Shown in pieces: positions 12,838 through 56,467 of a stretch of DNA of 64,000 nucleotides (its first letter is position 1; each line of letters starts with the position of its first letter). This DNA is from Macrostomum lignano (taxonomy: Eukaryota). Below the pieces are notes generated by a model. That model searched no databases. It saw nothing but the letters and a program-made list of their open reading frames with translations, and had not been told where the DNA came from. The position numbers and the translations under genes are program-made. The stretch lies in assembly GCA_002269645.1 (NCBI GenBank), contig NIVC01001462.1, forward strand, positions 62,001 through 126,000, given 5' to 3'.

Positions 12838-13120
12838 CCAATCGGGCAAGATGTGCCGACCGACCGACAGCTCAGCCTCAGCTATTGCGCGGCGCGTACG
12901 GCTGTCCAAGGACTGGGGGAAGGGGGGGGTTGACACGCACACCCTCAATTGCCCCAGCTAATGCTGGCACCCATTTTACAGCTGGGTGAACTGAAGAAAT
13001 ACGGGTACAGAGTTAAGCGTCATGCTCAAGGACACAGATTTTTTTCCAAGTGGGATCGGGAATCGAACCCCCAATCTTCAAGTCGTGAGTCGGACGCTCT
13101 AACCACTAGGCTACAACCCC
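12838..13120 (-). mobile_element. tRNA-derived SINE family B with CORE/MIR-like central domain
   Basis: Minus strand: GGGGTTGTAGCCTAGTGGTTAG (A box)...GGTTCGATTCCC (B box), then GTGTCCTTGAGCATGACGCTTAAC...CAGTTCACCCAGCTGTAAAATGGG. Second copy at 15250. Confidence 0.75.
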
Positions 13121-24520: not shown

Positions 24521-25040
24521 TGTCAGGTTGACTTCTTTCCAATAGGTCGCGCAAGCACAATGTGATCTTGGCTGCGACTCAGGAAATGGGTATTGCAACC
24601 TGCGCTATCAGAAAATAGCCTTTGATGTTTGCCGCTAATAGCAGTCTCTTCTGGAAGCAGAAATTTGCATTGTTTACTGCAACCATAGGAGCGGCAGGTG
24701 AGAGACAAGATTTTGACGATCCAGTGCTCAGCCCAGTAACTGAGGATCTGGGAGGCTGGCCCAGCAACTGAGGATCTGGGAGGCTAGCCCAGCAACTGAG
24801 GATCTGGGAGGCTGGTGGCTCAGCAACTGAGGATCTGGGAGGCTGGCCCTGCAACTGAGGATCTGGGAGGCTGGCCCAGCAACTGGGGATCTGGGAGGCT
24901 GGTGGCTCAGCAACTGAGGATCTGGGAGGCTGGTGGCCCAGCAACTGACACTCTGGGAGACTGGCCCGTCAAATGAGAATCTGGATGGCTGACCCAGTAA
25001 CTGAGGCTCTGGGTGGCTGGCCCAGCATCTGCGGATCTGG
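24521..25040. repeat. Second copy of head plus 28-bp minisatellite
   Basis: Homology with 9691 starts at TGTCAGGTTGAC; followed by the same 28-bp units. Confidence 0.9.
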
Positions 25041-36489: not shown

Positions 36490-37505
36490 TAGGGATCTGG
36501 GAGGCTGGCCCAGCAGATGAGGATCTGGGAGGCTGGCCCAGCAACTGAGGATCTGGGAGGCTGGCCCAGTAGATGAGGATCTGGGAGGCTGACCCAGCAA
36601 CTGAGAATATCGGAGGCTGGACCAGCAACTGAGAATATTGGAGGCTATATAGATATAGATATCTATATAGATGAGGATCTGGGAGGCTGGCCCAGCAGAT
36701 GAGGATCTGGGAGGCTGGCCCAGCAACTGAGGATCTAAGAGGCTGGCCCAGCAACTGAGGATCTGGGAGGCTGGCCCAGTAGATGAGGATCTGGGAGGCT
36801 GGTGGCCCAGCAACTGAGGATCTGGGAGGCTGGCCCAGCAACTGAGGATCTGGGAGGCTGGTGGCCCAGCAACTGAGGATCTGGGAGGCTGGCCCAGCAA
36901 CTGAGGATCTGGGAGGCTGGCTCAGCAACTGAGGATCTGGGAGGCTGGCCCAGCAACTGAGGATCTGGGAGGCTGGCCCAGCAACTGAGGATCTGGGAGG
37001 CTGGCCCAGCAACTGAGGATCTGGGAGGCTGGCCCAGTAGATGAGGATCTGGGAGGCTGGCCCAGCAACTGAGGATCTGGGAGGCTGGCCCAGTAGATGA
37101 GGATCTGGGAGGCTGGCCCAGTAGATGAGGATCTGGGAGGCTGGCCCAGCAACTGAGGATCTGGGAGGCTGGCCCAGCAACTGAGGATCTGGGAGGCTGG
37201 CCCAGTAGATGAGGATCTGGGAGGCTGGCCCAGCAACTGAGGATCTGGGAGGCTGGCTCAGCAACTGAGGATCTGGGAGGCTGGCCCAGCAACTGAGGAT
37301 CTGGGAGGCTGGCCCAGCAACTGAGGATCTGGGAGGCTGGCCCAGCAACTGAGGATCTGGGAGGCTGGCCCAGTAGATGAGGATCTGGGAGGCTGGCCCA
37401 GCAACTGAGGATCTGGGAGGCTGGCCCAGTAGATGAGGATCTGGGAGGCTGGCCCAGCAACTGAGGATCTGGGAGGCTGGTGGCCCCAGCAACTGAGGAT
37501 CTGGG
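36490..37505. repeat. Third array of the 28-bp CTGAGGATCTGGGAGGCTGG minisatellite (no head)
   Basis: Same unit and orientation as the 9.9 kb and 24.7 kb arrays. Confidence 0.95.
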
Positions 37506-38288
37506 AAGGTGAAACAAAAGCCCGAAGACAATGTGGTAAGTACAGCCGAATGACACTATAAAATAGACAATTTTGGCAGAGCAAGTAAACAGAAACGTCA
37601 ACCAATGACTTTTTGGATGCAACAATAATTACGAAGGGTAAAGCGACTATTTATATTGTTTATTGACAGTAGGGCGGTGTCTGTTTTTAACAAAAAAACA
37701 CGCACAGAGGTCTCAAACACAAAAGACAGGAGCCTGACAAAAAACAACAAAAAATATAGAGCTGTGTATTAAGCGTTTGAATATTCCAGAAAAAAACTGC
37801 GTTTCTGTTAACAATTTATAACATGGACAGTTAACTAACTGGATAAGCGAATCAATCGATAGGTTTGGATAAAAAAATTCACTCATAAAAGTGTGCTGCA
37901 ATAGGCGCAAAAATTACATATACAATATCTAAAGCTGAGTAGTTTTTTTTATAAAAAAACGAAATTGATAAAACAAAGATACTGGGATGAATTTGTTAAA
38001 CAAAGACCTGCTAAACAGGAACACGTTCAAAGCACTTTTTCTGCTCAAATTGCATGACGGTCGGTTAATATGGCTTCTAGAAAGATTCTATAATCAAGCG
38101 TGCTTACAATATATTACCCCTGTACTTTTAGGGATCATTGACGCTAGTATTGATGACTACAACGGCATTGGTACGATAGAGAGGCTAATATTTAGAATCC
38201 GAGAAGACTTTAAAAACGCGAACTGATCAGACACAAATAACACCTAATAAAAAATGTTAGTAAAATTTAATGCTTAATCAGCTACATA

Positions 38289-39605
38289 CTGGGTGAACAC
38301 TTAAAATCTGGATTTTCCGAGTTTAGGCCATAGACAGCGGCTGCTAGCTGCTATGAAGCCAGAAACTTACTGAGATGCTCTCACACTCACTAGCTATCAG
38401 TTCTGCAGCAGCAAAACTAGCAGCTCAAACCCTAACGAGCCATGCTGTCACTTAACGAAGAGCAGCGCAGACGCCTGGTCGTACAGTACAAAACTGAGCA
38501 CCCCGGACAGAGCAACCATGCCATTGCTAAGTACTTCGCTGAGGTTGGGGTGGCACGCTCCACAGTCTACGCCATTCTGAATCGTTACGAAGAAGGCGGC
38601 AAAGAATCTGTGCTGCGCAGTGCTGGTTCAGGCTGCCACAGGACGGAGCTCAAGGTCACGAACGCGGAAGTGAAGAACATCGTGAAGGACCCGCAACGAG
38701 GACTGTCGCAGCGGGAGATCGCGCGCAAGTTTGACATCAGCCAAGCTTATGTGGGGAAAATTCTTCAGGAAAATGGCCTGAAAGCTTATAAGAAGGAGAA
38801 AGTACCGGAGAGAGCGAGAGAGACAGCAGGTGCGTGTTGGCAGACTGTACCGAACCATCTTGGACGGACGCGGAGGCGACTTGGATTTCGTTATCGATGA
38901 TGAGTCGTACTTCCACATGTCCAGCCAAACGATTCCTGGCAACAGCTTCTACTATGCCACTGCACGCGGCGACGCTCCTGTTGAGAAGCGCGTTTCACCT
39001 CAAAAGAAGTTCGGCGACAAGATCCTGGTGTGGCTGGCCATCAGCAGGCATGGGGCTTCGCGAGTGTACATGTGTCACTCCAAGACGATGAACAAGGAGC
39101 TGTACGCAAACGAGTGCATTCGCAAGCGGCTGGTGCCATTTCTCAATGAGCAGCACAGCGATGGAAATTACCTGTTCTGGCCAGATCTGGCCTCCTGCCA
39201 TTACGCCAAGGACGTGATCGAGGTGTTCCAGCAGCTGGACATCAACTTTGTCTCGAAGGAGCAGAATCCTCCCTGCGTGCCTCACCTTCGTCCAATCGAG
39301 CACTTTTGGGGCATTTTGAAGCAGCAGGTGTACTATCATAGTTGGCAGGCTCAGACACTTCAGCAGCTGGAGAACAGAATCAAGAAATGCCTGAGGGAGA
39401 TGGACTGGTCCGTTGTACATCACATGATGGGACAGGTCAAGTCGCAGATTCGCAGGGCGCGCGCTGATGGCTTTTAATCGGCTTATTGTTAACTCTATGA
39501 TGATTCCTGTTTCTTGTTGAATACTTCCCCGTTAAAAAGTTTGGTTATCCTGTTTATAACGCCACGAAATATAAAAATTTAGAGACGTCCAGATTTTAAG
39601 TGTTA
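38289..39605 (+). mobile_element. IS630-Tc1-mariner element, DD37E type, transposase 38442-39477 with one frameshift near 38810-38830
   Basis: TA|CTGGGTGAACACTTAAAATCTGGA left TIR; TCCAGATTTTAAGTGTT right TIR lacking the last 7 bp; VIDDESYF, FWPDLASCH, RPIEHFWG with 37 residues between the 2nd D and E. Confidence 0.92.
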
Positions 39606-39861: not shown

Positions 39862-40779
39862 CTACTGACGACTGAAGCCAAGTAGTATGAGAAAGATGTA
39901 GACAACATCCACGTAGATCTGCATAGCTCCGTAGACGTACTCCTCCTCGGATAGATCGTGCCTACGACCGCCGACAACGCGCTGGGTGTCGAAGATGAGG
40001 AACAGCACGAACAGCAGCGCCAGCAGGCCGCCATAGACGCAGTCAAGAATCTTGGCGGTCATTGAGAAATTCGGATCGCCCCTGTACACAAAGAAGGTGA
40101 CCAAGCAGGACAGTCCGAACAGGAACACCACCAGGCTAAAACCGAACAGCAAGCCGCTGCACATGGTGAAGTCGTAGCGAGTCTGCACAGCGAATAGGGT
40201 GACGCCAAGGCACACGGCGGCGGTGACGCCAAGGCACACGGCCACCGTGTTAGTCTGATAGCACGAAGCAATAACTCCAGTCATGAAGGACAAGCTAGCC
40301 GTGAAGATGGCCAAAGAAATAAAATTGCCAGGAAATTTACGACGCAGCGGTGTAATGCAGACCAGAGCAAAGTACATGATAATAAAGATTCCATAGGACA
40401 CGTGGAACAGCCACAGATTGGATCTGGCAAATTGTTTCACAGGTTTCACAGCCGAGAAAATGATCACAACAGTGAAGGTGACCAACAGTTGCGCAAACAG
40501 TATCAGATAGACTTTGCGGATGAAGCCACGCCGGATCTCTTTATTGTCGAGGCCGCGGATAGCGAATTCGCCAACTTCATTGGTGGCGCCAGATTCCACA
40601 TCACCAGTAGATCCAGGCTGGTTACTAAAGCCTTCATTTTTTATGCCCCCTGTACCCGAGCCCTGAGCCTGAGCAGCGCCAGCCTTTTGCGGACAGTCAG
40701 TGTAAGCTTCTGCCGGATATGGAGGCGGCTGCACCTCAACTTCATTGGAATAATTTTTCAAAGGCTGATCAGCAGACAT
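39862..40779 (-). CDS. Lifeguard/TMBIM paralog 2, intronless CDS (305 aa)
   Basis: IRRGFIRKVYLILFAQL, RRKFPGNFISLAIFT, QTRYDFT, FDTQRVVGGRRHDLSEEEYVYGAMQIYVDVV. Confidence 0.93.
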   Translation of the reverse strand: MSADQPLKNYSNEVEVQPPPYPAEAYTDCPQKAGAAQAQGSGTGGIKNEGFSNQPGSTGDVESGATNEVGEFAIRGLDNKEIRRGFIRKVYLILFAQLLVTFTVVIIFSAVKPVKQFARSNLWLFHVSYGIFIIMYFALVCITPLRRKFPGNFISLAIFTASLSFMTGVIASCYQTNTVAVCLGVTAAVCLGVTLFAVQTRYDFTMCSGLLFGFSLVVFLFGLSCLVTFFVYRGDPNFSMTAKILDCVYGGLLALLFVLFLIFDTQRVVGGRRHDLSEEEYVYGAMQIYVDVVYIFLILLGFSRQ

Positions 40780-43110
40780 GGTTACAATTGGTTTCAGTGT
40801 TTTTGTTATAACTTTAATCTGTTAGCAATAAGCTGAAGGATAGAATTGGTAAAAATTGGCATGTTAGGTTAGCATGATTAGCAATGTTACTTACTATAAT
40901 TCCTTTTTTTAAGTAGCCTAGCAAAATTGACACAGAGCAACCTCAAAAAAGGATTATTGTTGCCACAGTTTAGCAAAAAGTCAAAAATCCTTTATAACAG
41001 GTTGCTTGATTGCCTGACTAGGGTGGGGGGGGCTGGCTTGACTAAGTATTTTTCTGGTCTCTTGTGTGTGGCCCCTACTCCCATTGCATTGTCGCCCCTC
41101 AGATTAACCAGTAGGTGACACAGGGAGAAGGTGGCTAATGCCCCAACTGATAGCAATCCTAGGCAGTTGTCCCCTATCCATTATTTGCCTGTCACAGCAC
41201 TATACTTGGACTCAACCACAAGGATATCAGGATGGTAGCCATGACCCTCTTAGGCATTTCTACCACTAAGAAAAATACCCATTCTTTTAGTGATGACCTG
41301 TCTTTACTTACCTAGATTACCTAGATGTTTGCTTTAAAGAATTCTACCAGTTAAAGGCTACTAGACAAGCAACTATTTACCTCTACAACTCTTGCATAGG
41401 GGACCAAGTAGCAGACACTAATACTGTCAGATGTCCCTGGAGAAAAAAGCAATAACTACATATGGTTGCCTAGGCTTAATAGAATAGGTGCAACATTTTC
41501 CTATTATATCCAGATGCCTAGAGTATATTGTATCTAAGCCAATGCAAAAGAAAATTAAATTATTTAAATTTATTTTCTTATTTGGTCTTCAACTAGACTA
41601 ATTGCAATGTTAGTGAAAAAGCTGGTTTACCATTATAGAAATTAGAAATCTGTTTCATTATATATCATATAATATATTATCATTTATTTTAAATTTTATA
41701 TTTACATGTATCTATAAAAATAATAACTGTTTCTGTATTTCTTTGCTATATATAGACTCCCAAACAACTTTATTTTTTTACAACAAATTTTGTATCCACC
41801 CTAAACTTACTACAAAAATGTCTTAGGTTACCTTAGAATTTCCTAAGTTTAAGACTTCCATATACTAAAAATTGTCTTCTTACCTAAAAGTGCAAAAAAA
41901 CTGACAAAAAGTGCTATTTTTCACTAAATCCTTCATAGTGCTATTTCACTAACACCAATTATCTTTAAATTTGACACAAATAGTCTTCAACTAGTTAGAC
42001 ACAATTTTGTAAAATTCAAGTCTAAAAGTTAATCCTGATTGATGTTATGTACTTTTGAAGCTAGTTTGCTTTTTGTCATAAAAGCCAACTTAAACTTTGC
42101 TCACATTTACCTTCCTAATCTTGGCCTAGATGTGTAGGAGGTTTTAAAATTGGCTTAAATTTAGCTGCCATAAGTTTGCTCCACATAAAGACTTCAAACT
42201 TGATATAAAATGGGAGAAAAAAGAGGAAAAGGAAAGAGAAAGGAGGAAAGGGTCTAGGATTCTAAGAGATTTTTTGCCTAGCTTACTTTGTTATTATTGA
42301 TCAATAACTCTTCTTTAATCATGGCTAGACACCCTGCTGCAACCACTACCACTACTTTAATCCCTATTGCAGATGCAACTTTAAGCTAACAATGTGCAAT
42401 TTGATTATAATAATAGCCACCAACAAAGTGATAATTTATTAGTTGGCTATGTACCACCTACTGGCCAACCAACAATGCTGTGCCACCTATCCTAGGCAGC
42501 GCACTTGTACTTTTGCCATTGATGCACAAGTTGGCATGTTGGAATCCCACTGTCAATTGACTATTAAGTTGTATTATAAATTTGAATGAGTGCTCAGAGA
42601 GGGGTCAAGGGGCAGAGCCCCCATATACTAACATTAAGAAGTTTTATCAAAATGCTGCACTTATCAAAATAATTGACTATATAAAAGGGCTCCCTCTCTC
42701 TCTGGTATGAATCTGACCAGAGCTGCAGCAGTCAATTGGATAAGGTCTAGGTAGACAAATTAACTTATTTTTTAGGGCTAGCTGTGCACGGAAAGGGGTG
42801 TCAGACAGAGAGGTGCAGCTAAAGGTAGAAAATATTTTATGGCAGATGCAGTAAGGGTCTAGGTGGGTCTAGGGAATGATTGATAATTGATGGCTATAAA
42901 ATGTACCATAAGTGAGACAGCCTGAAAAAGTTTATTAAATTCCACGATAGTATACTGTCTAATTTATCTATCAGTCTTCAGTTCTTATCTCACAATCAGT
43001 TCTCTTATCTCCACAATGCAATGCCAGTTTTATGAGTGTAAAAGGAGCCCCCACCTCTCTAACTTGGAAATTTAAATATACTGCACATTGTTGTTGAGCT
43101 TCTATTTTTA

Positions 43111-43735
43111 CGAGGGGTGCACAAAAAGTCTTGGCAACTGGCTCATAACTTTTTAAATAAACGTTTAAACGTAACCATTTTTTAATCTCATAAATATAAC
43201 CATATTTTGCGTTTGTTCATAAATTTTCAGCTCATTGCATTGATTTTTTTGCTTCCTAGAGCATTTTGATTAATGTACAGTCTCGTTTTCAGCCTTCAAA
43301 TGGAAAATATCACTGCTGATCAGTGGAGATTTTATGTTTTCATGCAATCGCAGCTCGGAGAAAACGCCACCAAAATTCATGCCGAGCTAGTCCAAGTTGT
43401 AGCAGATCAAGCCCCTTTGTACCGCACTGTTGCCCATTGGATTGAACAGGTCAGTGCTGGTTGACGCTTCATGACCGACAGCCCTCATTTTGGGAGGCCA
43501 ATGACATCCGTGACCGAGCAGAACATTGTTGCTGTGCGACAGCTGGTGGATGAAGATTGCAATATCACTGTTGCACTACTTAGCCAGACAATCGGCATTT
43601 CTGATGGCAGTGTCCGAACCATCTTGCATGACCATCTTGGCCTCCGCAAGGTCACGGCCCGTTGGGTACCTCATGCACTGACAGCAGAGCAGAAGCAGGA
43701 GAGGGTTCGATGCAGCCAAGAATTTCTGCGATGCT
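43111..43735 (+). mobile_element. 5' half of a mariner element (pseudogenised)
   Basis: TA|CGAGGGGTGCACAAAAAGT TIR; HTH region and LRKVTARWVPHALTAEQK; stop at 43462 (likely CGA>TGA); catalytic domain missing. Confidence 0.88.
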
Positions 43736-44183
43736 TGAAACTACATGAAGCTAGCGTTGCTGTCGAGACAATTGCAAAGGCAACGGGGCACAAGGTAAGT
43801 CAAACTAAATAAAATGAGTTTATGCATATTTTTTGTAAATTAAAATCATATGCAATATATGAGTGTACATGTGTATTGTGTACACTACTTCACTATTTCT
43901 TTATAAAAATGCTTCCTTCTGCAGGTCAGCACTTCAGTTGAGCGCCACATCCATTAGGGGAAAAAGAGAGAGAGCAAAATGGCATAGATCAGCACCTGCC
44001 TAATGGAGTCACTTGCCAGTCAAATGGCTGGCTTCTCAAGCCCTTTATCTATGCCATTGGTGGCCACCAGAGAAGCTGGTGACACGGAAAAGATTCAAAA
44101 CCAAGCTGATGGTCACAAGACAATGAAAATAGTTGCTCATGAGTCATGGGGACACCAATGTAGTTGAGATTCACTTTAACTAG
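43736..44183 (+). pseudogene. Possible spliced Crypton-type tyrosine recombinase C-terminus, decayed
   Basis: KLHEASVAVETIAKATGHK|gtaagt...ttctgcag|VSTSVERHIH*GKKRESKMA*IS resembles the YR box-II TGH(K/R)S..S...YI motif; weak. Confidence 0.35.
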
Positions 44184-44560
44184 CAGGACTGCATTTATAT
44201 TTTCTTATGAAATCCATTTGTTAATTTTCAGTTTCAATGCTGGGAAAACCTGGAAAATGAAATTTAACTTAGCATAGACACCCTGTAATGGCATTTGTTT
44301 ATTTTTTAATTTGGTTTTATAAAACATTTAAATAAACTGTTTCTGAAAAGCTTTTGACATGTTACTACTGAACATCTTGAATAAATTGCATGAATAAAGC
44401 TTGTGCAGGAATGATATCCTGCATGCATAAGTGTGCAAGAATGAAATCTTGCATGCATGGTCAACCGACAATGTAGCTACCAAAATAGGAAAATGGTCAT
44501 TTCACTGATAGCTGCTACTAGGCATGCTTTCAATGCTAGACATAAGCATTAATCCAAAAG

Positions 44561-45100
44561 GGATCCTTCTTTGAGGCCAGTCATTTGCCTATGACCTAGC
44601 TAATCAACCTTATTTACTAGTGGGCTATGTATGCCAAGTAGGAAAATACTTGGCAGCGTTGCAAAAACATTGCTATTTAGACAATTGTGGACTAGCAAAA
44701 CTTCATCCAGGATATCTGCAGTTAGTACAAGACTACAATACTATCTACTACAGCTAAAAGAGCCTACTGTTGATATTAGAATTAATAAAAGCTATTTCTT
44801 TCACTACAGGAACTACCAAGACTAGTATTTACCATGTTAATAGGTTTCAGGGATAATTGAAAGGGGCTCTAACCATTGTATATATGATGATGGCTATATT
44901 GGATCATAGTGCAACCAATATCCTGCCACTTGTGCAATAGTATATTTTATCTAGGTTGCACATCATCACAGACAAGTGGTAGGCTTATAACTAGCTACCC
45001 AACCACTTGACTATAAATCATTGACTAAACTTCAAATTGATCTTACCAACCTAGATGTCATACAAACAACATAGAGAGCAAATAGGCCCATACTAAGGCT
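44561..45100 (+). pseudogene. Decayed Merlin/IS1595-family DDE transposase
   Basis: GSFFEASHLPMT*LINLIY*WA; INKS for IDES; *VSGIIERG for WVFGIIERG; DHSATNILPLVQ*YI...IITDKW*AYN*L; NH*LNF; HTNNIESK*. Confidence 0.85.
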
Positions 45101-46599
45101 TGCTTCAAGGCCATGCATGGAACTTCAAGGCCCTTTTCAATATGGATGCTGACCAATTTGGCAACAAATAAATTTGGTAACAGAAATTCAAAATGGACCA
45201 ATTCAGTCAAAGCAAATTTGGCAAAAATCTAGGCAAATTTAGTGATAATTAATGAAAGAAAAAATGGTATATAATTTGGATAATTCCTTTAATACAATTG
45301 TATTCTTAAATACATATTAGCTTTCCCTTGTCATTAAGTTTTTTATAGATTATTTATCCTTGTGAGTTTTAAAAGTCCTTTCCAAAAATGTTTGCTAATT
45401 TAAGGTTGGATGACATTGTAAGCAAAAATGTTTGGGACTTGAAAAACAATTTTCTTGTATGCCTAATAAGGTCTTTCTATTGGTTACAATGTTGGAAAAA
45501 GGGATTTGCAAAAATATGCCATGCAGAGAAAAATGACAAAATTAAAAAATGTCAAATGTCTCTTATTGTATGTACCACTATATTCTTGATGTGAAATGTC
45601 CAATTTAACAATACTTTTTTTGGTTAAACTTTATAAACTTTCATGAGCATTTTAAGAAAGCCTTTATTTCATATAATTTGTTTTAACTTGTCTTTAACTA
45701 TTGTAAAAGGCCCTTCTTGTTTTATGTACAAAATCATCTATCTATACTTATTTCAAACTTGCATAAAACAAAAAAAAATTTTGTTTTAATATTTGTATTT
45801 TTAGAAATATTTTTCCATTTTTTTGTTTTAAACAACAATGAAAGCTAATATAAATAGACAAGTTTTGGAGCCAGAAGAGGCAACTTGGTTTGCAGACTCA
45901 AGTCTCAAAGCAAGCATTAATAATAGTGAACATATAACAGTGAGTTTTCAAGAAATATTTAAGAAGTGTTTTTCAAGTTAATTATTTGCAGAGTAGAGTA
46001 AAATAGACCAAAGCATCTATAGTATATACTACTGAGAGGTAAAGTAGTAGAAGGAAACAAAGTAGATCTTAAATCAATATAGATAAAAATAACTAGAGGC
46101 TATGACCCTCTGATCTCAATAATGCCTAGGATTAGAAATACATGCAATACATATACCAATAGACCAATATACCACACAGGCCAAATTACTAGTAGAATGC
46201 TACCAGAATAATAGTAATTGCTACCAGAATAATAAAGAAAAATACTTGAAAGGGCTATATAGTATTCTAAGAATAATTTATAAACCAAATACTCACACTA
46301 ATACTTAGATAAATACCTAGACAAATACTTAGAGATATACTTAGACTAATTCTAAGAAAAATTTCTTAGACTTATTCTAAGATTGATAAACTTATCATTT
46401 ATTCATAGAATAGTCTTGGTGATTGGTGAAAGCTTGGTGAAAGCTACCAACATTAAGACATTTTATATAGAACAAAGTATAGCCTTAGTACAACTCAGTA
46501 ATAGCTTTAGGACAATTCATAAAGACAAAGGAATAACCCCTAGCATGTGTGGGTTCCCCAACAGATATTTTTTCTTTGAATTAATAATTCAAACAAAAA

Positions 46600-46830
46600 A
46601 TGAATTCATGTTACGGGATACATTCCTTACTCTGACGCCATATTCAGCTTTAAAAATTTGTAAGCAGAAGTTTTATGTCCCAAAGGAAAAAACATTGGCA
46701 CAAATGCAAAGTATGTCAAAAGACAAATTTATTTGGCATCCCTTACAAACACATTTTTGAAGCAAATATCTTAGGAAATACAATATGAAAGGCAATGTGT
46801 CTAAGATGTCATTGCAAAGCTGAGATATGC
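46600..46830 (+). pseudogene. Decayed MULE/Mutator-type SWIM zinc-finger region
   Basis: LTLTPYSALKICKQ, then frameshifted HKCKVCQKTNLFGIPYKHIF (CxC...GIPCxH with TGC>TAC). Confidence 0.55.
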
Positions 46831-47100
46831 ATCAAGAATTGATAAAAGTTTTAGAGCAAATGATTGAACCATTGTGATGCAGCAATAAATCAAAGTTTTG
46901 GTTGATCTTGGTTGAAGATCCTTGATCAACAAAAAGTAAATTATACTAATAATAGTAATATTATGTGGTAACTTAAGTTAGACTTGGTTTTACTCTGCTT
47001 TAGGCCTATACCTAGACTAGGGCATAGACCTAGACTTAAACCTTTTTATTTTGGTCAAAGTAGGCCTAGGCCCTACTGATCCCTATTGCAGCCAAGGTCT

Positions 47101-48285: not shown

Positions 48286-49256
48286 CACCGGATCCGATGT
48301 TGACTTTCGTCACCTCTCTCACCTCATTATAGTAAGGGTAGGGGCCTAGGGTAGACACAAATATTTTAATCTGTAAAATGTTGGAAAGATTAACTTTTGC
48401 TGACACAGTTCGACTAGTGTTTTTGACTCAAATTGTCTGAAAGGGTATATTTTTTCAAACAGATGACCATGTGTATAATAATTTGTCCATTTTTGCAAAT
48501 TAATAGACATGATTGCTTAGACTAGGCAAGAGACAGAGACTGAGACTACTTGCAATTGCAGTGTGTCAGTGTATAGGCGAGTAGCTACAGTTGTGTTGCA
48601 CATCGTTTGCTTTAATTGATATTGATGTTAGCTGGCATTTTGTTTTGTCTAATCATGCCCTAGTCTTTGATTTTATATTGATTTGTCTAGGCCTACCATA
48701 AGCCTAGTTTGAAGGGAAAATGTATGCCTGGATTTCCCAGCATACGATACAACAAGGGTCTTACCATTTTCAATATATATCAGGGTATATCCCGATGTAC
48801 ATGACAGCGGACACATTGTGTCAAAGACAAATGACACATTTTTGTATTGGCATATCAACCTGGTATAGGCCTACAAATCAAATGAGGTTTTGTTATGTTT
48901 TCCAGCATTAAACCCAGTTTCATTCTATATTCAATTCAAAGTGACAAAATGAAAGAACATACAAAAGCAATAAATATAATCTAATAGCTAAAGCATAGGC
49001 AGGAATCTAATTTATTATACTTTTAGGACTTAATATAATTTTACTTCATTTGAAGTCTATAGCAGTTTTTTTAGGTGTTTTGTAGTCCATTGTGGTCCAT
49101 TGCATCCATTGCAGTGTTTACATGGACTATAAGACAATGGCTAGCCAGATTTCTAGTATTGAAACCTATTTTCTAATGCTAATAGCTATGGATCTAGCAC
49201 TAGAAATGGTAGGCCTATTCTAGCAGTGCAATTTATATATAATAAAGTAAAAACTT
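48286..49256. repeat. Long direct repeat copy 1 (971 bp)
   Basis: Nearly identical to 52548-53512 (two substitutions and one 6-bp indel seen). Confidence 0.95.
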
Positions 49257-49271
49257 GTCAAGCTAGGAACA

Positions 49272-52200
49272 CTCGCGTGCGTCAAGAGAAAAATAAAGTT
49301 TCGTAGCTCTGCGTTGAGTAGAAGTGTCTGTCAGCGAATGTCAAGCTGGACCCCCAAAATACACTACGGAGATAGGAACACAGTTTGCAGGTGAATAACT
49401 CGTACAGGCTTTAAGCTAGGGTGCTGATTTTTTACTTGCCAACGCATCTCGCGTGCGTCAAAAGAAAAATAAAGTTTTGTAGCTCTGCGTTGAGTAGAAG
49501 TGTCTGTCAGCGAATGTCAAGCTGGACCCCTAAAATACACTATGGAGATAGGAACACAGTTTGCAGGTGAATAACTCGTACAGGCTTTAAGCTAGGGTGC
49601 CGATTTTTGACTTGCCAACGCATCTCGTGTGCGTCAAGAGAAAAATAAAGTTTTGTAGCTCTGCGTTGAGTAGAAGTGTCTGTCAGCGAATGTCAAGCTG
49701 GACCCCCAAAATACACTACGGAGATAGGAACACAGTTTGCAGGTGAATAACTCGTACAGGCTTTAAGCTAGGGTGCTGATTTTTGACTTGCCAACGCATC
49801 TCGCGTGCGTCAAGAGAAAAAAAAAGTTTCGTAGCTCTGCGTTGAGTAGAAGTGTCTGTCAGCGAATGTCAAGCTGGACCCCCAAAATACACTACGGAGA
49901 TAGGAACACAGTTTGCAGGTGAATAACTCGTACAGGCTTTAAGCTAGGGTGCTGATTTTTGACTTGCCAACGCATTTCGCGTGCGTCAAGATAAAAATAA
50001 AGTTTCGTAGCTCTGCGTTGAGTAGAAGTGTCTGTCAGCGAATGTCAAGCTGGACCCTCAAAATACACTACGGAGATAGGAACACAGTTTGCAGGTGAAT
50101 AACTCGTACAGGCTTTAAGCTAGGGTGCTGATTTTTGACTTGCCAACGCATCTCGCGTGCGTCAAGAGAAAAATAAAGTTTCGTAGCTCTGCGTTGAGTA
50201 GAAGTGTCTGTCAGCGAATGTCAAGCTGGACCCCCAAAATACACTACGGAGATAGGAACACAGTTTGCAGGTGAATAACTCATACAGGCTTTAAGCTAGG
50301 GTGCTGATTTTTGACTTGCCAACGCATCTCGCGTGCGTCAAGAGAAAAATAAAGTTTCGTAGCTCTGCGTTGAGTAGAAGTGTCTGTCAGCGAATGTCAA
50401 GCTGGACCCCCAAAATACACTACGGAGATAGGAACACAGTTTGCAGGTGAATAACTCGTACAGGCTTTAAGCTAGGGTGCTGATTTTTGACTTACCAATG
50501 CATTTCGCGTGCGTCAAGATAAAAATAAAGTTTCGTAGCTCTGCGTTGAGTAGAAGTGTCTGTCAGCGAATGTCAAGCTGGACCCCCAAAATACACTACG
50601 GAGATAGGAACACAGTTTGCAGGTGAATAACTCGTACAGGCTTTAAGCTAGGGTGCTGATTTTTGACTTGCCAACGCATCTCGCGTGCGTCAAGAGAAAA
50701 ATAAAGTTTCGTAGCTCTGCGTTGAGTAGAAGTGTCTGTCAGCGAATGTCAAGCTGGACCCCCAAAATACACTACGGAGATAGGAACACAGTTTGCAGGT
50801 GAATAACTCATACAGGCTTTAAGCTAGGGTGCTGATTTTTGACTTGCCAACGCATCTCGCGTGCGTCAAGAGAAAAATAAAGTTTCGTAGCTCTGCGTTG
50901 AGTAGAAGTGTCTGTCAGCGAATGTCAAGCTGGACCCCCAAAATACACTACGGAGATAGGAACACAGTTTGCAGGTGAATAACTCGTACAGGCTTTAAGC
51001 TAGGGTGCTGATTTTTGACTTACCAACGCATCTCGCGTGCGTCAAGAGAAAAATAAAGTTTCATAGCTCTGCGTTGAGTAGAAGTGTCTGTCAGCGAATG
51101 TCAAGCTGGACCCCCAAAATATACTACGGAGATAGGAACACAGTTTGCAGGTGAATAACTCGTACAGGCTTTAAGCTAGGGTGCTGATTTTTGACTTGCC
51201 AACGCATCTCGCGTGCGTCAAGAGAAAAATAAAGTTTCGTAGCTCTGCGTTGAGTAGAAGTGTCTGTCAGCGAATGTCAAGCTGGACCCCCAAAATACAC
51301 TACGGAGATAGGAACACAGTTTGCAGGTGAATAACTCGTACAGGCTTTAAGCTAGGGTGCTGATTTTTGACTTGCCAACGCATTTCGCGTGCGTCAAGAT
51401 AAAAATAAAGTTTCGTAGCTCTGCGTTGAGTAGAAGTGTCTATCAGCGAATGTCAAGCTGGACCCCCAAAATACACTACGGAGATAGGAACACAGTTTGC
51501 AGGTGAATAACTCGTACAGGCTTTAAGCTAGGGTGCTGATTTTTGACTTGCCAACGCATCTTGCGTGCGTCAAGAGAAAAATAAAGTTTCGTAGCTCTGC
51601 GTTGAGTAGAAGTGTCTGTCAGCGAATGTCAAGCTGGACCCCCAAAATACACTACGGAGATAGGAACACAGTTTGCAGGTGAATAACTCGTACAGGCTTT
51701 AAGCTAGGGTGCTGATTTTTGACTTGCCAACGCATCTCGCGTGCGTCAAGAGAAAAATAAAGTTTCGTAGCTCTGCGTTGAGTAGAAGTGTCTGTCAGCG
51801 AATGTCAAGCTGGACCCCCAAAATACACTACGGAGATAGGAACACAGTTTGCAGGTGAATAACTCGTACAGGCTTTAAGCTAGGGTGCTGATTTTTGACT
51901 TGCTAATGCATCTCACGTGCGTCAAGAGAAAAATAAAGTTTCGTAGCTCTGCGTTGAGTAGAAGTGTCTGTCAGCGAATGTCAAGCTGGACCCCCAAAAT
52001 ACACTACGGAGATAGGAACACAGTTTGCAGGTGAATAACTCGTACAGGCTTTAAGCTAGGGTGCTGATTTTTGACTTACCAACGCATCTCGCGTGCGTCA
52101 AGAGAAAAATAAAGTTTCATAGCTCTGCGTTGAGTAGAAGTGTCTGTCAGCGAATGTCAAGCTGGACCCCCAAAATACACTACGGAGATAGGAACACAGT

Positions 52201-52306
52201 TTGCAGGTGAATAACTCGTACAGGCTTTAAGCTAGGGTGCTGATTTTTTACTTGCCAACGCATCTCGTGTGCGTCAAGAGAAAAATAAAGTTTCGTAGCT
52301 CTGCGT
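49272..52306. repeat. 176-bp satellite, 17 full units plus a partial, followed by a diverged monomer to ~52400
   Basis: Unit starts at 49272, 49448, 49624 ... 52264. Confidence 0.97.
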
Positions 52307-52547: not shown

Positions 52548-53512
52548 CACCGGATCCAATGTTGACTTTCGTCACCTCTCTCACCTCATTATAGTAAGGG
52601 CAGGGGCCTAGGGTAGACACAAATATTTTAATCTGTAAAATGTTGGAAAGATTAACTTTTGCTGACACAGTTCGACTAGTGTTTTTGACTCAAATTGTCT
52701 GAAAGGGTATATTTTTTCAAACAGATGACCATGTGTATAATAATTTGTCCATTTTTGCAAATTAATAGACATGATTGCTTAGACTAGGCAAGAGACAGAG
52801 ACTGAGACTACTTGCAATTGCAGTGTGTCAGTGTATAGGCGAGTAGCTACAGTTGTGTTGCACATCGTTTGCTTTAATTGATATTGATGTTAGCTGGCAT
52901 TTTGTTTTGTCTAATCATGCCCTAGTCTTTGATTTTATATTGATTTGTCTAGGCCTACCATAAGCCTAGTTTGAAGGGAAAATGTATGCCTGGATTTCCC
53001 AGCATACGATACAACAAGGGTCTTACCATTTTCAATATATATCAGGGTATATCCCGATGTACATGACAGCGGACACATTGTGTCAAATGACACATTTTTG
53101 TATTGGCATATCAACCTGGTATAGGCCTACAAATCAAATGAGGTTTTGTTATGTTTTCCAGCATTAAACCCAGTTTCATTCTATATTCAATTCAAAGTGA
53201 CAAAATGAAAGAACATACAAAAGCAATAAATATAATCTAATAGCTAAAGCATAGGCAGGAATCTAATTTATTATACTTTTAGGACTTAATATAATTTTAC
53301 TTCATTTGAAGTCTATAGCAGTTTTTTTAGGTGTTTTGTAGTCCATTGTGGTCCATTGCATCCATTGCAGTGTTTACATGGACTATAAGACAATGGCTAG
53401 CCAGATTTCTAGTATTGAAACCTATTTTCTAATGCTAATAGCTATGGATCTAGCACTAGAAATGGTAGGCCTATTCTAGCAGTGCAATTTATATATAATA
53501 AAGTAAAAACTT
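52548..53512. repeat. Long direct repeat copy 2 (965 bp)
   Basis: See copy 1; offset 4262 bp. Confidence 0.95.
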
Positions 53513-56467
53513 AATAATGGCTAATAGATATTAAACCCAAGATTTTTAGGGGTTGCAAAATATTGAGATAGAGCAGGGGCCAAGAAAATAAATTTTTGGC
53601 AAATAAAAGTCAGTTGGTTGGTTGCTGTTGCTGTCACCAATAAAGTGGGACGGTTTTAAACTTTGAATTTCTACCAACATTGAGATTGAGTTTGCACAAA
53701 TAATTCTAAATAATTGTTTAGACAAATCATAGGCCTAACAAAATTTTCTCCTGTTTACTCTAGCTACCAGGGTTTTCAATTCTGGGAAGAAGGTAGTCAT
53801 AATCACAATTGAGTAATCATCAATGGGCACAGTTGTTTAGATAGTAGACACCAAGGTCTTGATATCATAAGTTAATGTATGTCAATTTGCTTCGTCTATT
53901 TCTTTTAGTAGAGTAGTACTGCTACCAAAATTTTATATTATAAAATGTTGAAATCTTTTAGCTCACTTGGAGTTGAGATTAATTTGGTTGTTTAATACCC
54001 TATTGACAAATGACTTAAGATAAGCTATAATGCTTTGACTAACTAATGAAAATAAATATTGGTTATTGCTGATTATTAATGGCTAAATAAGAATTGCTCA
54101 TATAGCAGTTTAATAAAAAGGCTATTAGTTGTTGTTAAAACTGACAAAAGATAGATTTCAGGCAATGCCAAGGGTGCAAATTAATGAGCTATCAAACTAT
54201 TAAAACAAAACTAGAAACATAAAAAATGAGGGACAAGGAAAATGAGCATAGAAAAAAAACATGACAGATAAGTTTGGTTAATAAATATGGTACGCAGAAT
54301 AAAATAATAGAATGGGGCAGGAGATGGCTCAGCTAGTAGGGCAGGCAATGGGGCAACTAAAAGGAAAACAAGGCCAATGGAACCAGCAAGAAAAGCAAGG
54401 GCCAAACAAAGGCAAGGAGGGGCCAAAAGAGGGAACATAAGAGGTCAATAGAGGGGGAAACAAATGGTTATGACAGATTTGAGTCCAGAAGCCAGAAACT
54501 TTCCCAAATGGTAGTCCTCGCTACCACAACATCATATTTTTGAAATAATATCTATGCTTTTAAGATAATAGATAAAATTGAGAATCAAAATTAAGTCTAG
54601 TTAAGATCTAAAAGTGCTTATTTCATAATTTTTTAATGTGTAAAATGATAATAAGTTTCTAATAAAAGGAAAAACAAATATTATATTTTATAGGCCCTAA
54701 TATTAAACTTGTTAGGCCTTAGTCACTTGTTTTGATGTTTATCTAATGTAGATATAATAATATTATAGTAAACAATAGTCACAGTTACTAATCTTGACTT
54801 TTTAGATCTAAAACTAAGATCAGCATAGAAAAAGTGCCAAGACTCTATTAAAAGCCATAGTTTGGAAGGCAACTTATTTGCTAGGATTTTTCAGCAAATA
54901 ACAACTAACAAGGCAGGGTAGAGGGCCTACTTGCCTTTTTCAATGTATGTTATGTAAGTATATCTTAGCATATAGATACATGACACAGCAGAAACATTGT
55001 GTTAATAATATATTTTTTAGTTCTAGTATACAAACAAGGTCTTATAATTTTTGCCATTAGACCCAGTATATAATAATATATAATCCAAACTATAAAGTAG
55101 ATTCTATTACATGGAAGATAACTAACTGCCTTCAGTAGGAAGCATTGCCAAATCTATAGCCATCTAGAACTTTAGCTATTACTCCTTAATAGAGCTAATG
55201 CAACATTTTAATAGGCCTAGCTATTGTTAAGTTAAGTATCCTGCATTTTTTAATTTTTGTTTTATTTAGAAAATAGTTTATTTAAACTTAACAACTTTTT
55301 TACTTTTATTTTGTACTTTAGAGTAGATTAGGCTATTTCAAAGTATTAAAGTAGATTTAAGTTAAAATTTAAGGGTATTACCTGGCATTTTTTGGGACCA
55401 AAAGTTTTTTGTCTTAAATATATTTTGGGATATGCATGCCATGATCTTAATTTATAGGCCTAATAAAAAAATTTAAAGTTGAACTTCAAATGTAGTTAAA
55501 CTGAATATATAATAGTGCATCATAAAAAATAAGAAAAAAATCTTATAATTTTTATTACCTACCCAATCTTAAAAAAATTATTTTTATAGACAAGTAAGAT
55601 TATCAAGTAAAATAACAAATTTACTAAAATGTCTTTCAAAATCTTTTTAGAGTCCTAAAATATAGTATATGGCATCATATTTATTTATAATTATTTTACA
55701 TTTTTGTTTCTTTTAAAGTATGTATTTCAACAGTCTACTAAATAACTAAAAGTTAATAAACAAGTTTTTAAAGGAGCAAACTAATTTGCATAAAGAATTA
55801 AGGGAAAGTTAATTTGCATTGGTCAAAACTAGGTTGCATAGACAATATTATTTAACATGCTTGGGCGCAACCTAGGGTTCACATGTAAGTTGCTATTATA
55901 CAGAATAGTAGTCACATGACTGCTCTCAGCCAATAGCGACTTACATATGTGTGTTGCCAATAGAAATGGCTGGGTGAATCCCAAGGTTGTGCATGTATGT
56001 TATTTAAGTAAATTGTTACTCATATTAACACTGAAATTGAGGCTAAATTTAATGTAAAGTATTAAAACTGTCGTATTTTTCTTAGAACTTCTTATCAAAG
56101 AATAGCTCTAGGTTTCTGCCATTTGTGGCATTGTGGATGTATTCATTTTTCCATAAAATGACAAATCCTTCTAATAACCTTACATATTAACATTAACTTG
56201 CATTTCTGTTCCTTAACCTTAAAATAATATGATCTATGATGTACAAAACATTTCCCTTGCTCATTTTGTGTCTTGTCCTAAATATTAGACTCCTAGACTA
56301 GATATATAAAACAACAATAAAAGAAGTTCTTTGTAGCACCAATCTATACTTTTTTATTTAATTTATTCAGGTGTTAGACCAATTCAAGGACTTGGTTTAA
56401 ATTTTCTATCTGCTTGTTTCATTCATGCACATTTGAAGAAAAGATTTTTGACAAGACTTTAATCATC

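What the first reader, a model, noticed from the sequence alone, without database searches (positions are those of the whole stretch)
44561..45100. RIP-like CpA>TpA hypermutation of a dead Merlin transposase in an animal genome
Seen: in the frame starting at 44561 there are six stops in 55 codons, all TAG (44597, 44618, 44639, 44678, 44693, 44723). More TAGs fall at conserved W/Q/R positions (44841 WVxG, 44938, 44980, 44992, 45083 NIES.W); the only other stop noted is one TGA in NH*LNF. Trp is hit as TGG>TAG (TpG>TpA), not TGA, at the positions I could place. Catalytic IDES reads INKS (ATT GAT GAA > ATT AAT AAA, both TpG>TpA). W-R-A-Y has TAG at R, implying CG>TA double hits. Hand count for 44581-44880: 1 CpG, ~38 TpA vs ~26 ApT. 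Established: ordinary CpG-methyl decay stops at TpG/CpA, whereas systematic CpA>TpA is the signature of fungal RIP. Inference: a repeat-targeted CpA-directed C>T mutator, or very heavy non-CpG methylation, acts in this lineage. Caveats: ancestral codons are inferred from family motifs, and CpA/TpG remain abundant, so the RIP substrate index is not classically low.
Basis: partly seen in the sequence, partly recalled or inferred. Interest (0 to 1): 0.88.

Follow-up and report, generated by a model that had tools for sequence, protein, structure and literature searches.

The report
Decayed Merlin transposon fossil, not RIP
This is an old, dead Merlin-type DNA transposon in the flatworm Macrostomum lignano whose many TAG stops come from heavy ordinary C-to-T decay of Trp, Gln and Arg codons, not from a fungal-style RIP defence, although a weaker CAG/CTG-specific decay signal around it deserves a genome-wide test.

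Summary
The sequence facts are right. Window 44450-45190 (+) is a fossil IS1595/Merlin transposase in Macrostomum lignano (contig NIVC01001462.1). It has three +1 frame changes, and its in-frame stops are 16 TAG, 2 TAA and 1 TGA. That TAG count was never reached in 5000 dinucleotide-preserving shuffles.

The TAGs sit at Trp, Gln and Arg columns of the closest homologues, so TGG, CAG and CGG decayed by transitions.

The RIP reading fails:
- RIP indices are 1.16, 1.23 and -0.07, against thresholds of >1.15, <=0.75 and >0.
- Context-normalised C>T is 17/43 at CpA, 6/26 at CpC, 4/17 at CpT and 6/6 at CpG (CpA against CpC+CpT, p=0.16).
- Cys TGY, most His CAY and the CAA codons are largely intact.
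- 24 tandem arrays and the dispersed repeat pairs of the window show no CpA bias, and 96-99% identical duplicates are barely mutated.

One signal remains. Within CpA only the CAG context is hot (7/11 to 12/16, against 10/32 to 14/44 elsewhere). CpG-free DNA outside the fossil also shows CAG/CTG depletion (odds ratio 1.6-2.2, against 0.67-0.89 in DNA that keeps its CpG). This could be a footprint of non-CpG methylation, but it is unproven.

Simple decay simulations still under-predict the TAG count.

The parts
44450..44728 (+). Fossil transposase segment A, covering residues about 61-151 of the closest homologues (N-terminal Cys-rich and helix region). In-frame stops: 10 TAG (44474, 44486, 44519, 44537, 44597, 44618, 44639, 44678, 44693, 44723) and 1 TAA (44543).
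   Evidence: tblastn of P0001 and P0002; stop list
44729..44747 (+). First junction where the reading frame shifts by +1 between homology segments.
   Evidence: Frames of the tblastn segments
44748..44882 (+). Fossil segment B, holding the first catalytic Asp motif. (V)EIDES now reads (D)IRINKS: D>N at 44784 (AAT) and E>K at 44787 (AAA). Stops: TAG 44823, TAA 44838, TAG 44841.
44884..45033 (+). Fossil segment C, best conserved (50% identity to P0001). The second catalytic Asp is retained (GAC at 44971). Stops: TAG 44938, 44980 and 44992; TGA 45022. A second +1 frame change lies at 44883.
45050..45190 (+). Fossil segment D. The HTNNIES motif keeps the catalytic Glu (GAG at 45074), and the invariant Trp reads TAG at 45083. 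Homology to P0017 runs to 45190. A third frame change lies in 45034-45049.
44001..47000 (.). CpG-free, AT-rich block that holds the fossil: the 500-nt tiles starting 44001 to 46501 have GC below 0.42 and CpG o/e below 0.3. Similar blocks are the tiles covering 41501-43000 and 53001-56500. Outside the fossil these tiles show CAG/CTG depletion with TAG/CTA and CAA/TTG gain.

Best explanation
Window 44450-45190 (+) is an ancient, immobile remnant of a Merlin (IS1595/ISXO2-like DDE) DNA transposon in the Macrostomum lignano genome. It sits in a CpG-free, AT-rich block of old non-coding DNA.

After it lost function it decayed neutrally under a strongly GC-to-AT-biased transition spectrum:
- Every inferable CpG has mutated, as expected from methyl-CpG deamination in a lineage that keeps DNMT1 and DNMT3.
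- About a quarter to a third of other G/C sites have changed by transition.
- Only about 13% of A/T sites have changed.

The stops are almost all TAG because transitions alone turn TGG, CAG and (in two steps) CGG into TAG. Its remaining G then sits in the slowest context (ApG).

CG>TA double hits are simply second hits in a very old sequence.

The decay is neither repeat-induced nor a general CpA>TpA process, so it is not RIP-like.

Shown here: the identity of the element, the origin of the stops, the loss of CpG and the context-normalised rates. Inferred: that the cause is methylation. Within CpA, the CAG context is mutated more than the rest. Whether that is real, and why, is open.
For: **Identity.**
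- PF12762 E=5e-5 and NF033547 E=3e-6.
- tblastn of P0001 gives four collinear segments, E=5e-28, and this is the only such locus in the window.

**Host.** An exact ORF match lies on GCA_002269645.1 contig NIVC01001462.1. The WGS accession NIVC00000000 is M. lignano, and a neighbouring transposase relative is named M. lignano by NCBI.

**Stop origins.** The TAGs lie at Trp (4-5), Gln (4), Arg (3) and Lys/Glu (1) columns of the 8 closest homologues.

**Rates.**

| Context | Sites changed by transition |
|---|---|
| CpG | 6/6 |
| CpA | 17/43 |
| CpC | 6/26 |
| CpT | 4/17 |
| A/T sites (any change) | 13/98 |

**CpG loss.** Two CpG remain in 678 nt, against 21 in the matching part of an intact relative's coding sequence.

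**Against RIP.**
- TpA/ApT is 1.16, (CpA+TpG)/(ApC+GpT) is 1.23 and the composite is -0.07 (counts). The published thresholds are >1.15, <=0.75 and >0.
- In 24 tandem arrays C>T is 3.9% at CpA, 4.7% at CpC, 6.2% at CpG and 2.7% at CpT.
- Dispersed repeat pairs: C/T mismatches followed by A 2.4%, by C 4.3%.
- A 1.3-kb Tc1-like element has a 96% identical copy on another contig with only 16 transition differences, 4 of the 14 that could be placed being of the CpA/TpA type.
- A 971-bp direct repeat is 99.2% identical.

**Enzymes.** M. lignano retains DNMT1 and DNMT3 and has low-level 5mC (PMC11292947, PMC9246332).
Against: - Forward simulations of decay from back-translated ancestors give only 3.4-8.5 in-frame TAGs under flat, CpA-biased or CWG-biased rates. 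The chance of reaching the observed 13 (aligned codons) is at most 0.06. Codon geometry plus simple rates does not fully explain the TAG excess.
- Trp codons went to TAG in 4-5 cases and never to TGA, whereas Cys TGY kept its G in 4 of 5 (the fifth changed by transversion, so G>A is 0/5).
- Ancestral states come from homologues that are only 40-50% identical in protein and 52% in DNA. Synonymous sites and codon-junction neighbours are therefore unknown.
- No other copy of this family could be retrieved.
- No terminal inverted repeats were found.
Confidence: 0.72

Rival explanations
1. Non-CpG methylation footprint. In densely methylated, silenced DNA of M. lignano, cytosines in CAG/CTG (CWG) are also methylated in the germ line, at a lower level than CpG. 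Their deamination converts CAG/CTG to TAG/CTA and CAA/TTG. The Merlin fossil, being rich in CAG and CTGG, therefore became TAG-rich.
For: - In the fossil, C>T at CAG is 7/11 (homologue agreement >=75%) or 12/16 (>=50%), against 10/32 or 14/44 at other CpA, 6/26 at CpC and 2/12 at CTH.
- Trp TGG>TAG occurred where the preceding base is C (CTGG). The two retained TGG are preceded by G.
- In independent sequence, the CpG-free tiles outside the fossil, the odds ratio TAG*CAA/(CAG*TAA) is 1.84 (z=3.3). That is the highest of 8 comparable classes; the others lie between 0.58 and 1.05.
- The ratio is 1.64 and 2.19 in tiles with CpG o/e below 0.4, and 0.88, 0.89 and 0.67 in tiles that keep CpG. The control classes show no such reversal (0.5-1.2 in every bin).
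- DNMT3 is retained in this species.
- A contested, locus-specific report describes CpA-context methylation in Schistosoma mansoni (PMC3710501).
Against: - The hypothesis was formed after seeing the data.
- Only about 8 kb of independent CpG-free DNA was available.
- Part of the contrast may come from coding constraint in the CpG-normal tiles.
- Tandem arrays show no CAG preference: CAG 4.7%, CAA 4.7%, CAT 4.1%.
- A CWG-rate simulation still yields only about 5 in-frame TAGs.
- No methylation data were available.
Confidence: 0.2
2. RIP-like defence. A repeat-targeted cytosine deaminase or methyltransferase converts CpA to TpA on both strands of duplicated DNA.
For: - TGG>TAG rather than TGA at 4-5 of 6-7 Trp columns, and CAG>TAG at Gln columns.
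- TpA exceeds ApT: 64 against 55 in 44561-45100.
- CpA has the highest non-CpG rate, 17/43.
Against: - The substrate index (1.23) and composite index (-0.07) fail the RIP thresholds.
- CpA against CpC+CpT is not significant (p=0.16), and not at all where the neighbouring base is known (p=1.0).
- Cys TGY shows 0/5 G>A, His CAY 3/10 C>T, and CAA/TTG is enriched.
- In the CpG-free DNA CpA o/e is 1.12 and TpA o/e is 0.93.
- Tandem and dispersed repeats lack a CpA bias, and young duplicates are nearly unmutated.
- RIP is described as fungus-specific (PMC7882544, PMC2621366).
- No second copy of this Merlin family was found that could have triggered a repeat-induced process.
Confidence: 0.03
3. APOBEC-type editing of single-stranded DNA. 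This would give strand-biased G>A changes in a GG context, which is known to turn TGG into TAG in retroviruses.
For: - Plus-strand G>A is 28/68 against C>T 5/24.
- Of 8 inferred CGN Arg codons, all changed at G2 and none remains as TGN.
- The CCA context shows 7/12 changed.
Against: - The strand bias is weak (about p=0.09).
- A 5' C neighbour gives 12/30 against 15/56 for other neighbours, which is not significant.
- CAG>TAG needs C>T on the other strand.
- A cut-and-paste DNA transposon has no obligatory single-stranded cDNA stage.
- G>A is seen before G, A, T and C alike.
Confidence: 0.03
4. TAG was a sense codon in the element's source organism, so the in-frame TAGs are original coding and not damage.
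For: In the coding frame TAG is the commonest codon (16 of 214), while TAA and TGA are rarer than in the other two frames: 2 against 6 and 5, and 1 against 4 and 4.
Against: - The TAGs fall on columns that are invariant Trp, and also on Gln and Arg columns. No single reassignment fits.
- Two Trp columns still read TGG.
- The reading frame has three shifts, and the first catalytic Asp is Asn.
- The precursor-plus-product pool (TAG+CAG+TGG) is itself largest in frame 0 (22 against 6 and 11), which explains the frame bias.
Confidence: 0.01

Closest known systems
Merlin superfamily of eukaryotic DNA transposons (IS1595/ISXO2-like DDE transposases, Pfam PF12762)
   Same: The protein is collinear with PF12762 transposases from sponges, octopus, scorpion, crinoid and rotifers. 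The conserved motifs are recognisable: GSFFE, VEIDES, GGIER, (S/T)DxWxAY, VNH, HTNxIE..W. The second catalytic Asp and the Glu are still in place.
   Different: It is dead: three frame changes, 19 in-frame stops and the first catalytic Asp changed to Asn. No terminal inverted repeats or target-site duplication are recognisable. No close relative from the same genome was found.
Fungal repeat-induced point mutation (RIP)
   Same: G:C to A:T transitions dominate. Trp and Gln codons became TAG. TpA slightly exceeds ApT.
   Different: - CpA and TpG are not depleted.
- The substrate and composite indices fail.
- There is no significant CpA preference once normalised.
- There is no dependence on duplication: young duplicates and tandem arrays are unaffected.
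- GC is 37-38%, against about 21-23% in the example RIP-affected regions tabulated in PMC7882544.
Methyl-CpG deamination decay of silenced transposons in animals
   Same: CpG is almost eliminated (o/e 0.05-0.08). All inferable CpG sites have mutated. The surrounding block has CpG o/e of about 0.09, while gene-like parts of the window are near 1. DNMT1 and DNMT3 are present in the species.
   Different: CpG decay alone ends at TpG/CpA. Here second hits and a CAG/CTG-specific loss come on top of it.
CHG (CWG) methylation decay in plant transposons, and mCAG/mCAC non-CpG methylation by mammalian DNMT3 (both from general knowledge)
   Same: CAG/CTG is depleted and TAG/CTA and CAA/TTG gained, and this is confined to the CpG-depleted compartment.
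   Different: No methylation data exist here and no chromomethylase is known in animals. The effect is modest (odds ratio about 1.6-2.2) and rests on about 8 kb plus one fossil.

Membership tests
Merlin / IS1595-type DDE transposon | Transposase homologous to the ISXO2-like DDE domain (PF12762) | tested here: met
   Pfam E=5.4e-5, 23.7 bits, below the gathering score of 27 because of decay. NCBIfam IS1595 E=3.3e-6. tblastn of PF12762 proteins E=5e-28 over four collinear segments.
Merlin / IS1595-type DDE transposon | D, D, E catalytic residues at the conserved positions | tested here: inconclusive
   All three columns align. The first Asp reads Asn (44784 AAT). The second Asp (44971 GAC) and the Glu (45074 GAG) are retained. 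This fits a dead member of the family.
Merlin / IS1595-type DDE transposon | Terminal inverted repeats flanked by a target-site duplication | tested here: inconclusive
   Only AT-rich, chance-level inverted matches were found in 43700-46300. Decay may have erased the ends.
RIP (repeat-induced point mutation) | Dinucleotide indices: TpA/ApT >1.15, (CpA+TpG)/(ApC+GpT) <=0.75, composite >0 | tested here: not met
   The values are 1.16, 1.23 and -0.07, from the counts. Thresholds are from PMC7882544.
RIP (repeat-induced point mutation) | C>T strongly preferring CpA after normalising for context | tested here: not met
   CpA 17/43, CpC 6/26, CpT 4/17 (p=0.16). With the neighbouring base fixed by the ancestral amino acid, 7/24 against 5/19. 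Outside CAG, CpA is 10/32.
RIP (repeat-induced point mutation) | Acts on duplicated DNA | tested here: not met
   The 24 tandem arrays and the dispersed repeat pairs show no CpA bias. Duplicates 96% and 99% identical are nearly unmutated. No second Merlin copy was found.
RIP (repeat-induced point mutation) | RID-type cytosine methyltransferase in the genome | not testable with these tools
   The M. lignano proteome cannot be searched here. The literature mentions only DNMT1, DNMT2 and DNMT3.
Methyl-CpG deamination decay | Severe CpG depletion and mutated ancestral CpG sites | tested here: met
   CpG o/e is 0.05-0.08. Inferred CpG sites changed in 6/6, or 11/11 at the laxer threshold. Two CpG remain, against 21 in an intact relative.
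Non-CpG (CWG/CAG) methylation decay | CAG/CTG lost to TAG/CTA and CAA/TTG, specifically in the methylated compartment | tested here: inconclusive
   Fossil: CAG 7/11 to 12/16 against other CpA 10/32 to 14/44 (p=0.08 and 0.004, post hoc). CpG-free tiles: odds ratio 1.64-2.19, against 0.67-0.89 in CpG-normal tiles. Tandem arrays show no effect.
Non-CpG (CWG/CAG) methylation decay | 5-methylcytosine actually present at CAG/CTG | not testable with these tools
   No methylome data were available. The published M. lignano paper (PMC4603488) is not held.
Stop-codon reassignment (TAG as a sense codon) | In-frame TAG at columns of one amino acid in an otherwise open frame | tested here: not met
   TAG falls on Trp, Gln, Arg and Lys/Glu columns. 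The frame also has three shifts plus TAA and TGA stops.

The most novel reading that the evidence does not exclude
Silenced, CpG-methylated DNA in the flatworm Macrostomum lignano also carries germ-line cytosine methylation, or another cytosine-deaminating activity, at CAG/CTG. This would leave a plant-like CWG depletion footprint (CAG/CTG to TAG/CTA and CAA/TTG) in old transposons, of which this TAG-riddled Merlin fossil is an extreme example.
Probability: 0.2. Interest if true: 0.65.

Novelty: new member of a known kind. Interest (0 to 1): 0.33.

Why it matters
As it stands this is an ordinary transposon fossil, and the claim of a RIP-like genome defence in an animal does not hold.

Two side results could matter if they hold across the genome:
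- In this window CpG loss is concentrated in AT-rich junk (o/e about 0.09), while gene-like sequence keeps CpG (about 0.95). That is the reverse of the usual invertebrate gene-body pattern and would point to transposon-directed methylation in a flatworm that retains DNMT1 and DNMT3.
- CAG/CTG depletion tracks CpG depletion. If real, that would be a mutational footprint of non-CpG methylation in an invertebrate germ line. It is directly testable with existing M. lignano assemblies and a methylome.

Tried and rejected
- **Searching with the raw translation.** A protein search with the stop-masked translation found nothing. A query repaired towards the family motifs was used only to fish out homologues, and all later alignments used the real window sequence.
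- **DNA-level ancestor.** The DNA of the closest homologue is only 52% identical to the fossil, so this was abandoned in favour of inferring ancestral bases from conserved amino acids.
- **Other copies.** The window holds only one Merlin locus, and 21 kb of another M. lignano contig holds none. A multi-copy consensus from the Tc1-like family failed because only one M. lignano relative is on record. The LINE ORF at 630-1490 is not on record.
- **Terminal inverted repeats.** None is convincing.
- **TAG as a sense codon, or an antisense ORF.** Rejected. The TAGs fall on Trp, Gln and Arg columns. The codon-aligned reverse frame would carry 11 stops, from the in-frame CTA, TTA and TCA codons.
- **APOBEC-like GG>AG signature.** Not significant.
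- **Other frames rich in TAG but poor in TAA and TGA.** The scan returned mostly tandem arrays and antisense strands of genes; no second coding fossil was recognised among them, and only one candidate was read.
- **Forward simulations.** Flat, strand-asymmetric, CpA-biased and CWG-biased models were run with host or homologue codon usage. None reproduces 13-16 in-frame TAGs.

Full report
**Where the window comes from.** A 305-residue single-exon ORF of the window (39862-40779, minus strand) is encoded exactly on contig NIVC01001462.1 of assembly GCA_002269645.1. Four papers tie the WGS accession NIVC00000000 to the Mlig_3_7 genome of the free-living flatworm Macrostomum lignano. A relative of the neighbouring Tc1-like transposase is named M. 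lignano by NCBI.

**The observation.**
- The frame starting at 44561 has six stops in its first 55 codons, all TAG, at the stated coordinates.
- Translating the three frames and aligning them to homologues shows a transposase read through four collinear segments: 44450-44728, 44748-44882, 44884-45033 and 45050-45127. One homologue extends the last segment to 45190. Each segment is shifted by +1 from the one before.
- By frame, TAG counts are 16, 1 and 5; TAA 2, 6 and 5; TGA 1, 4 and 4.
- In 5000 dinucleotide-preserving shuffles, in-frame TAG averaged 4.6 (maximum 12) and TAG+CTA averaged 33.7, against 52 observed.
- The pattern is real and not a by-product of dinucleotide composition. Because the region was selected for this very feature, the significance is inflated.

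**What it is.**
- The stitched translation matches Pfam PF12762 (ISXO2-like/IS1595 DDE transposase, E=5e-5) and NCBIfam IS1595 (E=3e-6).
- A query repaired towards the family motifs retrieved 1350 PF12762 proteins, the named ones among them from sponges, octopus, a scorpion, a crinoid and rotifers. This is the eukaryotic Merlin group.
- The best of them, P0001, aligns to the real window DNA at E=5e-28. This is the only such locus in the 64 kb.
- The first catalytic Asp is Asn (IDES reads INKS, 44781-44792). The second Asp (44971) and the Glu (45074) survive.
- No terminal inverted repeats could be recognised, and no closer relative from the same genome exists in the protein collection.
- It is an old, isolated fossil. 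It lies in a block with GC of about 0.30-0.38 and almost no CpG.

**Where the stops come from.**
- Against the eight closest homologues, the TAGs lie on Trp columns (44519, 44693, 44841, 45083, probably 44618), Gln columns (44597, 44723, 44938, 44992), Arg columns (44537, 44823, 44980) and one Lys/Glu column (44678).
- All but the last can be reached from TGG, CAG or CGG by transitions alone.
- Trp columns read TAG at 4-5, TGG at 2 and never TGA.
- Of 8 inferred CGN Arg codons, all changed at G2, four also at C1, and none remains as TGN.

I inferred ancestral bases at non-degenerate codon positions where at least 75% of the eight closest homologues agree.

| Context | Transitions / sites |
|---|---|
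| CpA | 17/43 |
| CpC | 6/26 |
| CpT | 4/17 |
| CpG | 6/6 |
| A/T sites (any change) | 13/98 |

- CpA against CpC+CpT gives p=0.16.
- Where the neighbouring base is itself fixed by the ancestral amino acid, the rates are 7/24 against 5/19 (p=1.0).
- The apparent TpG>TpA excess comes mainly from first-position G preceded by a present-day T at a synonymous site (10/19). That T may be a decayed C, which would make these hidden CpG sites.
- Other CpA sites are largely intact: Cys TGY shows 0/5 G>A, His CAY 3/10 C>T, and the five NCA codons are unchanged.
- CAA/TTG is enriched (o/e 1.66), TAA/TTA is not (0.65), and CpA and TpG stay above expectation.

**RIP criteria.**
- From the counts, TpA/ApT is 1.16, (CpA+TpG)/(ApC+GpT) is 1.23 and the composite is -0.07. 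The thresholds used for fungal genomes are >1.15, <=0.75 and >0 (PMC7882544). Two of the three fail clearly.
- RIP is repeat-induced, so I tested the repeats of the same window.
- In 24 tandem arrays, C>T relative to the array consensus is 3.9% at CpA, 4.7% at CpC, 6.2% at CpG and 2.7% at CpT. CAG and CAA are equal at 4.7%.
- Dispersed repeat pairs show C/T mismatches at 2.4% before A, 4.3% before C, 5.1% before G and 1.9% before T.
- The 1.3-kb Tc1-like element at 38293-39604 has a 96.2% identical copy on another contig. The two differ by only 16 transitions, and 4 of the 14 that could be placed in context are of the CpA/TpA type.
- A 971-bp direct repeat is 99.2% identical.
- Nothing in this locus behaves like a repeat-directed CpA mutator.

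**What remains unexplained.**
- I simulated decay from back-translated ancestors, drawing residues from the eight homologues and using either host codon usage or the homologue's own codons.
- Flat, strand-asymmetric, CpA-biased and CWG-biased rates give 3.4-8.5 in-frame TAGs. These models mostly over-predict TAA. The observed 13 TAGs in the 196 aligned codons were reached in at most 6% of runs.
- The concentration of TAG in the coding frame is mostly explained by codon structure. The pool TAG+CAG+TGG is 22 in frame 0, against 6 and 11 in the other frames.
- Conversion of that pool is nevertheless higher than at other CpA sites.

**A narrower signal.**
- Splitting CpA by the next base gives C>T of 7/11 at CAG against 10/32 at CAA/CAC/CAT (p=0.08).
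- With a 50% agreement threshold it is 12/16 against 14/44 (p=0.004).
- The Trp codons that became TAG are preceded by C (CTGG). The two retained TGG are preceded by G.
- This hypothesis was formed post hoc, so I tested it on sequence outside the fossil.
- In thirteen 500-nt CpG-free tiles, the odds ratio TAG*CAA/(CAG*TAA) is 1.84 (z=3.3). It is the largest of eight comparable classes; the others lie between 0.58 and 1.05. It exceeds 1.2 in 11 of the 13 tiles.
- A second tiling binned all non-tandem tiles of the window and of the second contig by CpG o/e:

| CpG o/e of tiles | CAG-class odds ratio |
|---|---|
| below 0.15 | 1.64 |
| 0.15-0.4 | 2.19 |
| 0.4-0.7 | 0.88 |
| 0.7-1.0 | 0.89 |
| above 1.0 | 0.67 |

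- The control classes stay between 0.5 and 1.2 in every bin and show no such reversal.
- CAG/CTG loss therefore accompanies CpG loss.
- This fits deamination of cytosines methylated in a CAG/CTG context in a silenced compartment. M. lignano retains DNMT1 and DNMT3 (PMC11292947, PMC9246332). A contested report describes CpA-context methylation in Schistosoma (PMC3710501).
- The sample is small, coding constraint contributes to the contrast with gene-like tiles, tandem arrays do not show the effect, and there are no methylation data. I rate this reading at about 0.2.

**Other readings considered.**
- TAG as a sense codon fails because the TAGs sit on Trp, Gln and Arg columns and the frame is broken in other ways.
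- An APOBEC-like GG>AG signature is not significant. Plus-strand G>A is 28/68 against C>T 5/24, and a 5'-C neighbour gives 12/30 against 15/56.

**Verdict.**
- The element is an ordinary, very old Merlin fossil.
- The RIP-like interpretation is not supported.
- Interest is modest unless a genome-wide analysis confirms that lead.

Noticed in passing
window 41501-43000, 44001-47000, 53001-56500, compared with gene-like tiles: CpG o/e is about 0.09 in AT-rich non-coding blocks and about 0.95 in gene-like tiles. This is the reverse of the usual invertebrate gene-body methylation footprint and suggests methylation directed at junk or transposon DNA in this flatworm.
   Followed up: partly
window 49272-52306, flanked by 48286-49256 and 52548-53512: A 176-bp satellite array (17 copies, 97% matches) is bracketed by two 971-bp direct repeats that are 99.2% identical. 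The arrangement looks like a recent duplication or an LTR-like structure.
   Followed up: no
window 38293-39604 (+); L004 9852-11187: A nearly intact Tc1-like (DDE_3) transposon has ORFs at 38442-38900 and 38830-39477 in different frames. A 96.2% identical copy lies on contig NIVC01000689.1 with unrelated flanks, so the family was recently mobile.
   Followed up: partly
window 9904-10664, 24731-25040, 36493-37506: The same 28-bp minisatellite unit (GCCCAGCAACTGAGGATCTGGGAGGCTG) forms three separate arrays. At least 24 minisatellite arrays with 18-50-bp units cover a large share of the window.
   Followed up: no
window 43471-43812 (+): A 113-residue open frame resembles, by eye only, the N-terminal helix-turn-helix part of a mariner-type transposase. 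It lies 0.6 kb upstream of the Merlin fossil, which suggests a cluster of transposon remnants. It was not checked against Pfam.
   Followed up: no
window 44404-44458 (+): Inside the N-terminal part of the fossil there is an imperfect tandem duplication of about 25-27 nt (TGCAGGAATGATATCCTGCATGCAT / TGCAAGAATGAAATCTTGCATGCAT). It reads as a repeated CxxMxSCMH peptide.
   Followed up: no
window 13051-13120 (-): A borderline Rfam tRNA match (30.5 bits, gathering score 29) that ARAGORN does not call. It is possibly a tRNA-derived repeat or pseudogene.
   Followed up: no
window 2475-3037 and 5541-6087 (+): Two exon sets 77% identical to each other encode Cys-rich, secreted-looking proteins. This is a local tandem gene duplication.
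   Followed up: no
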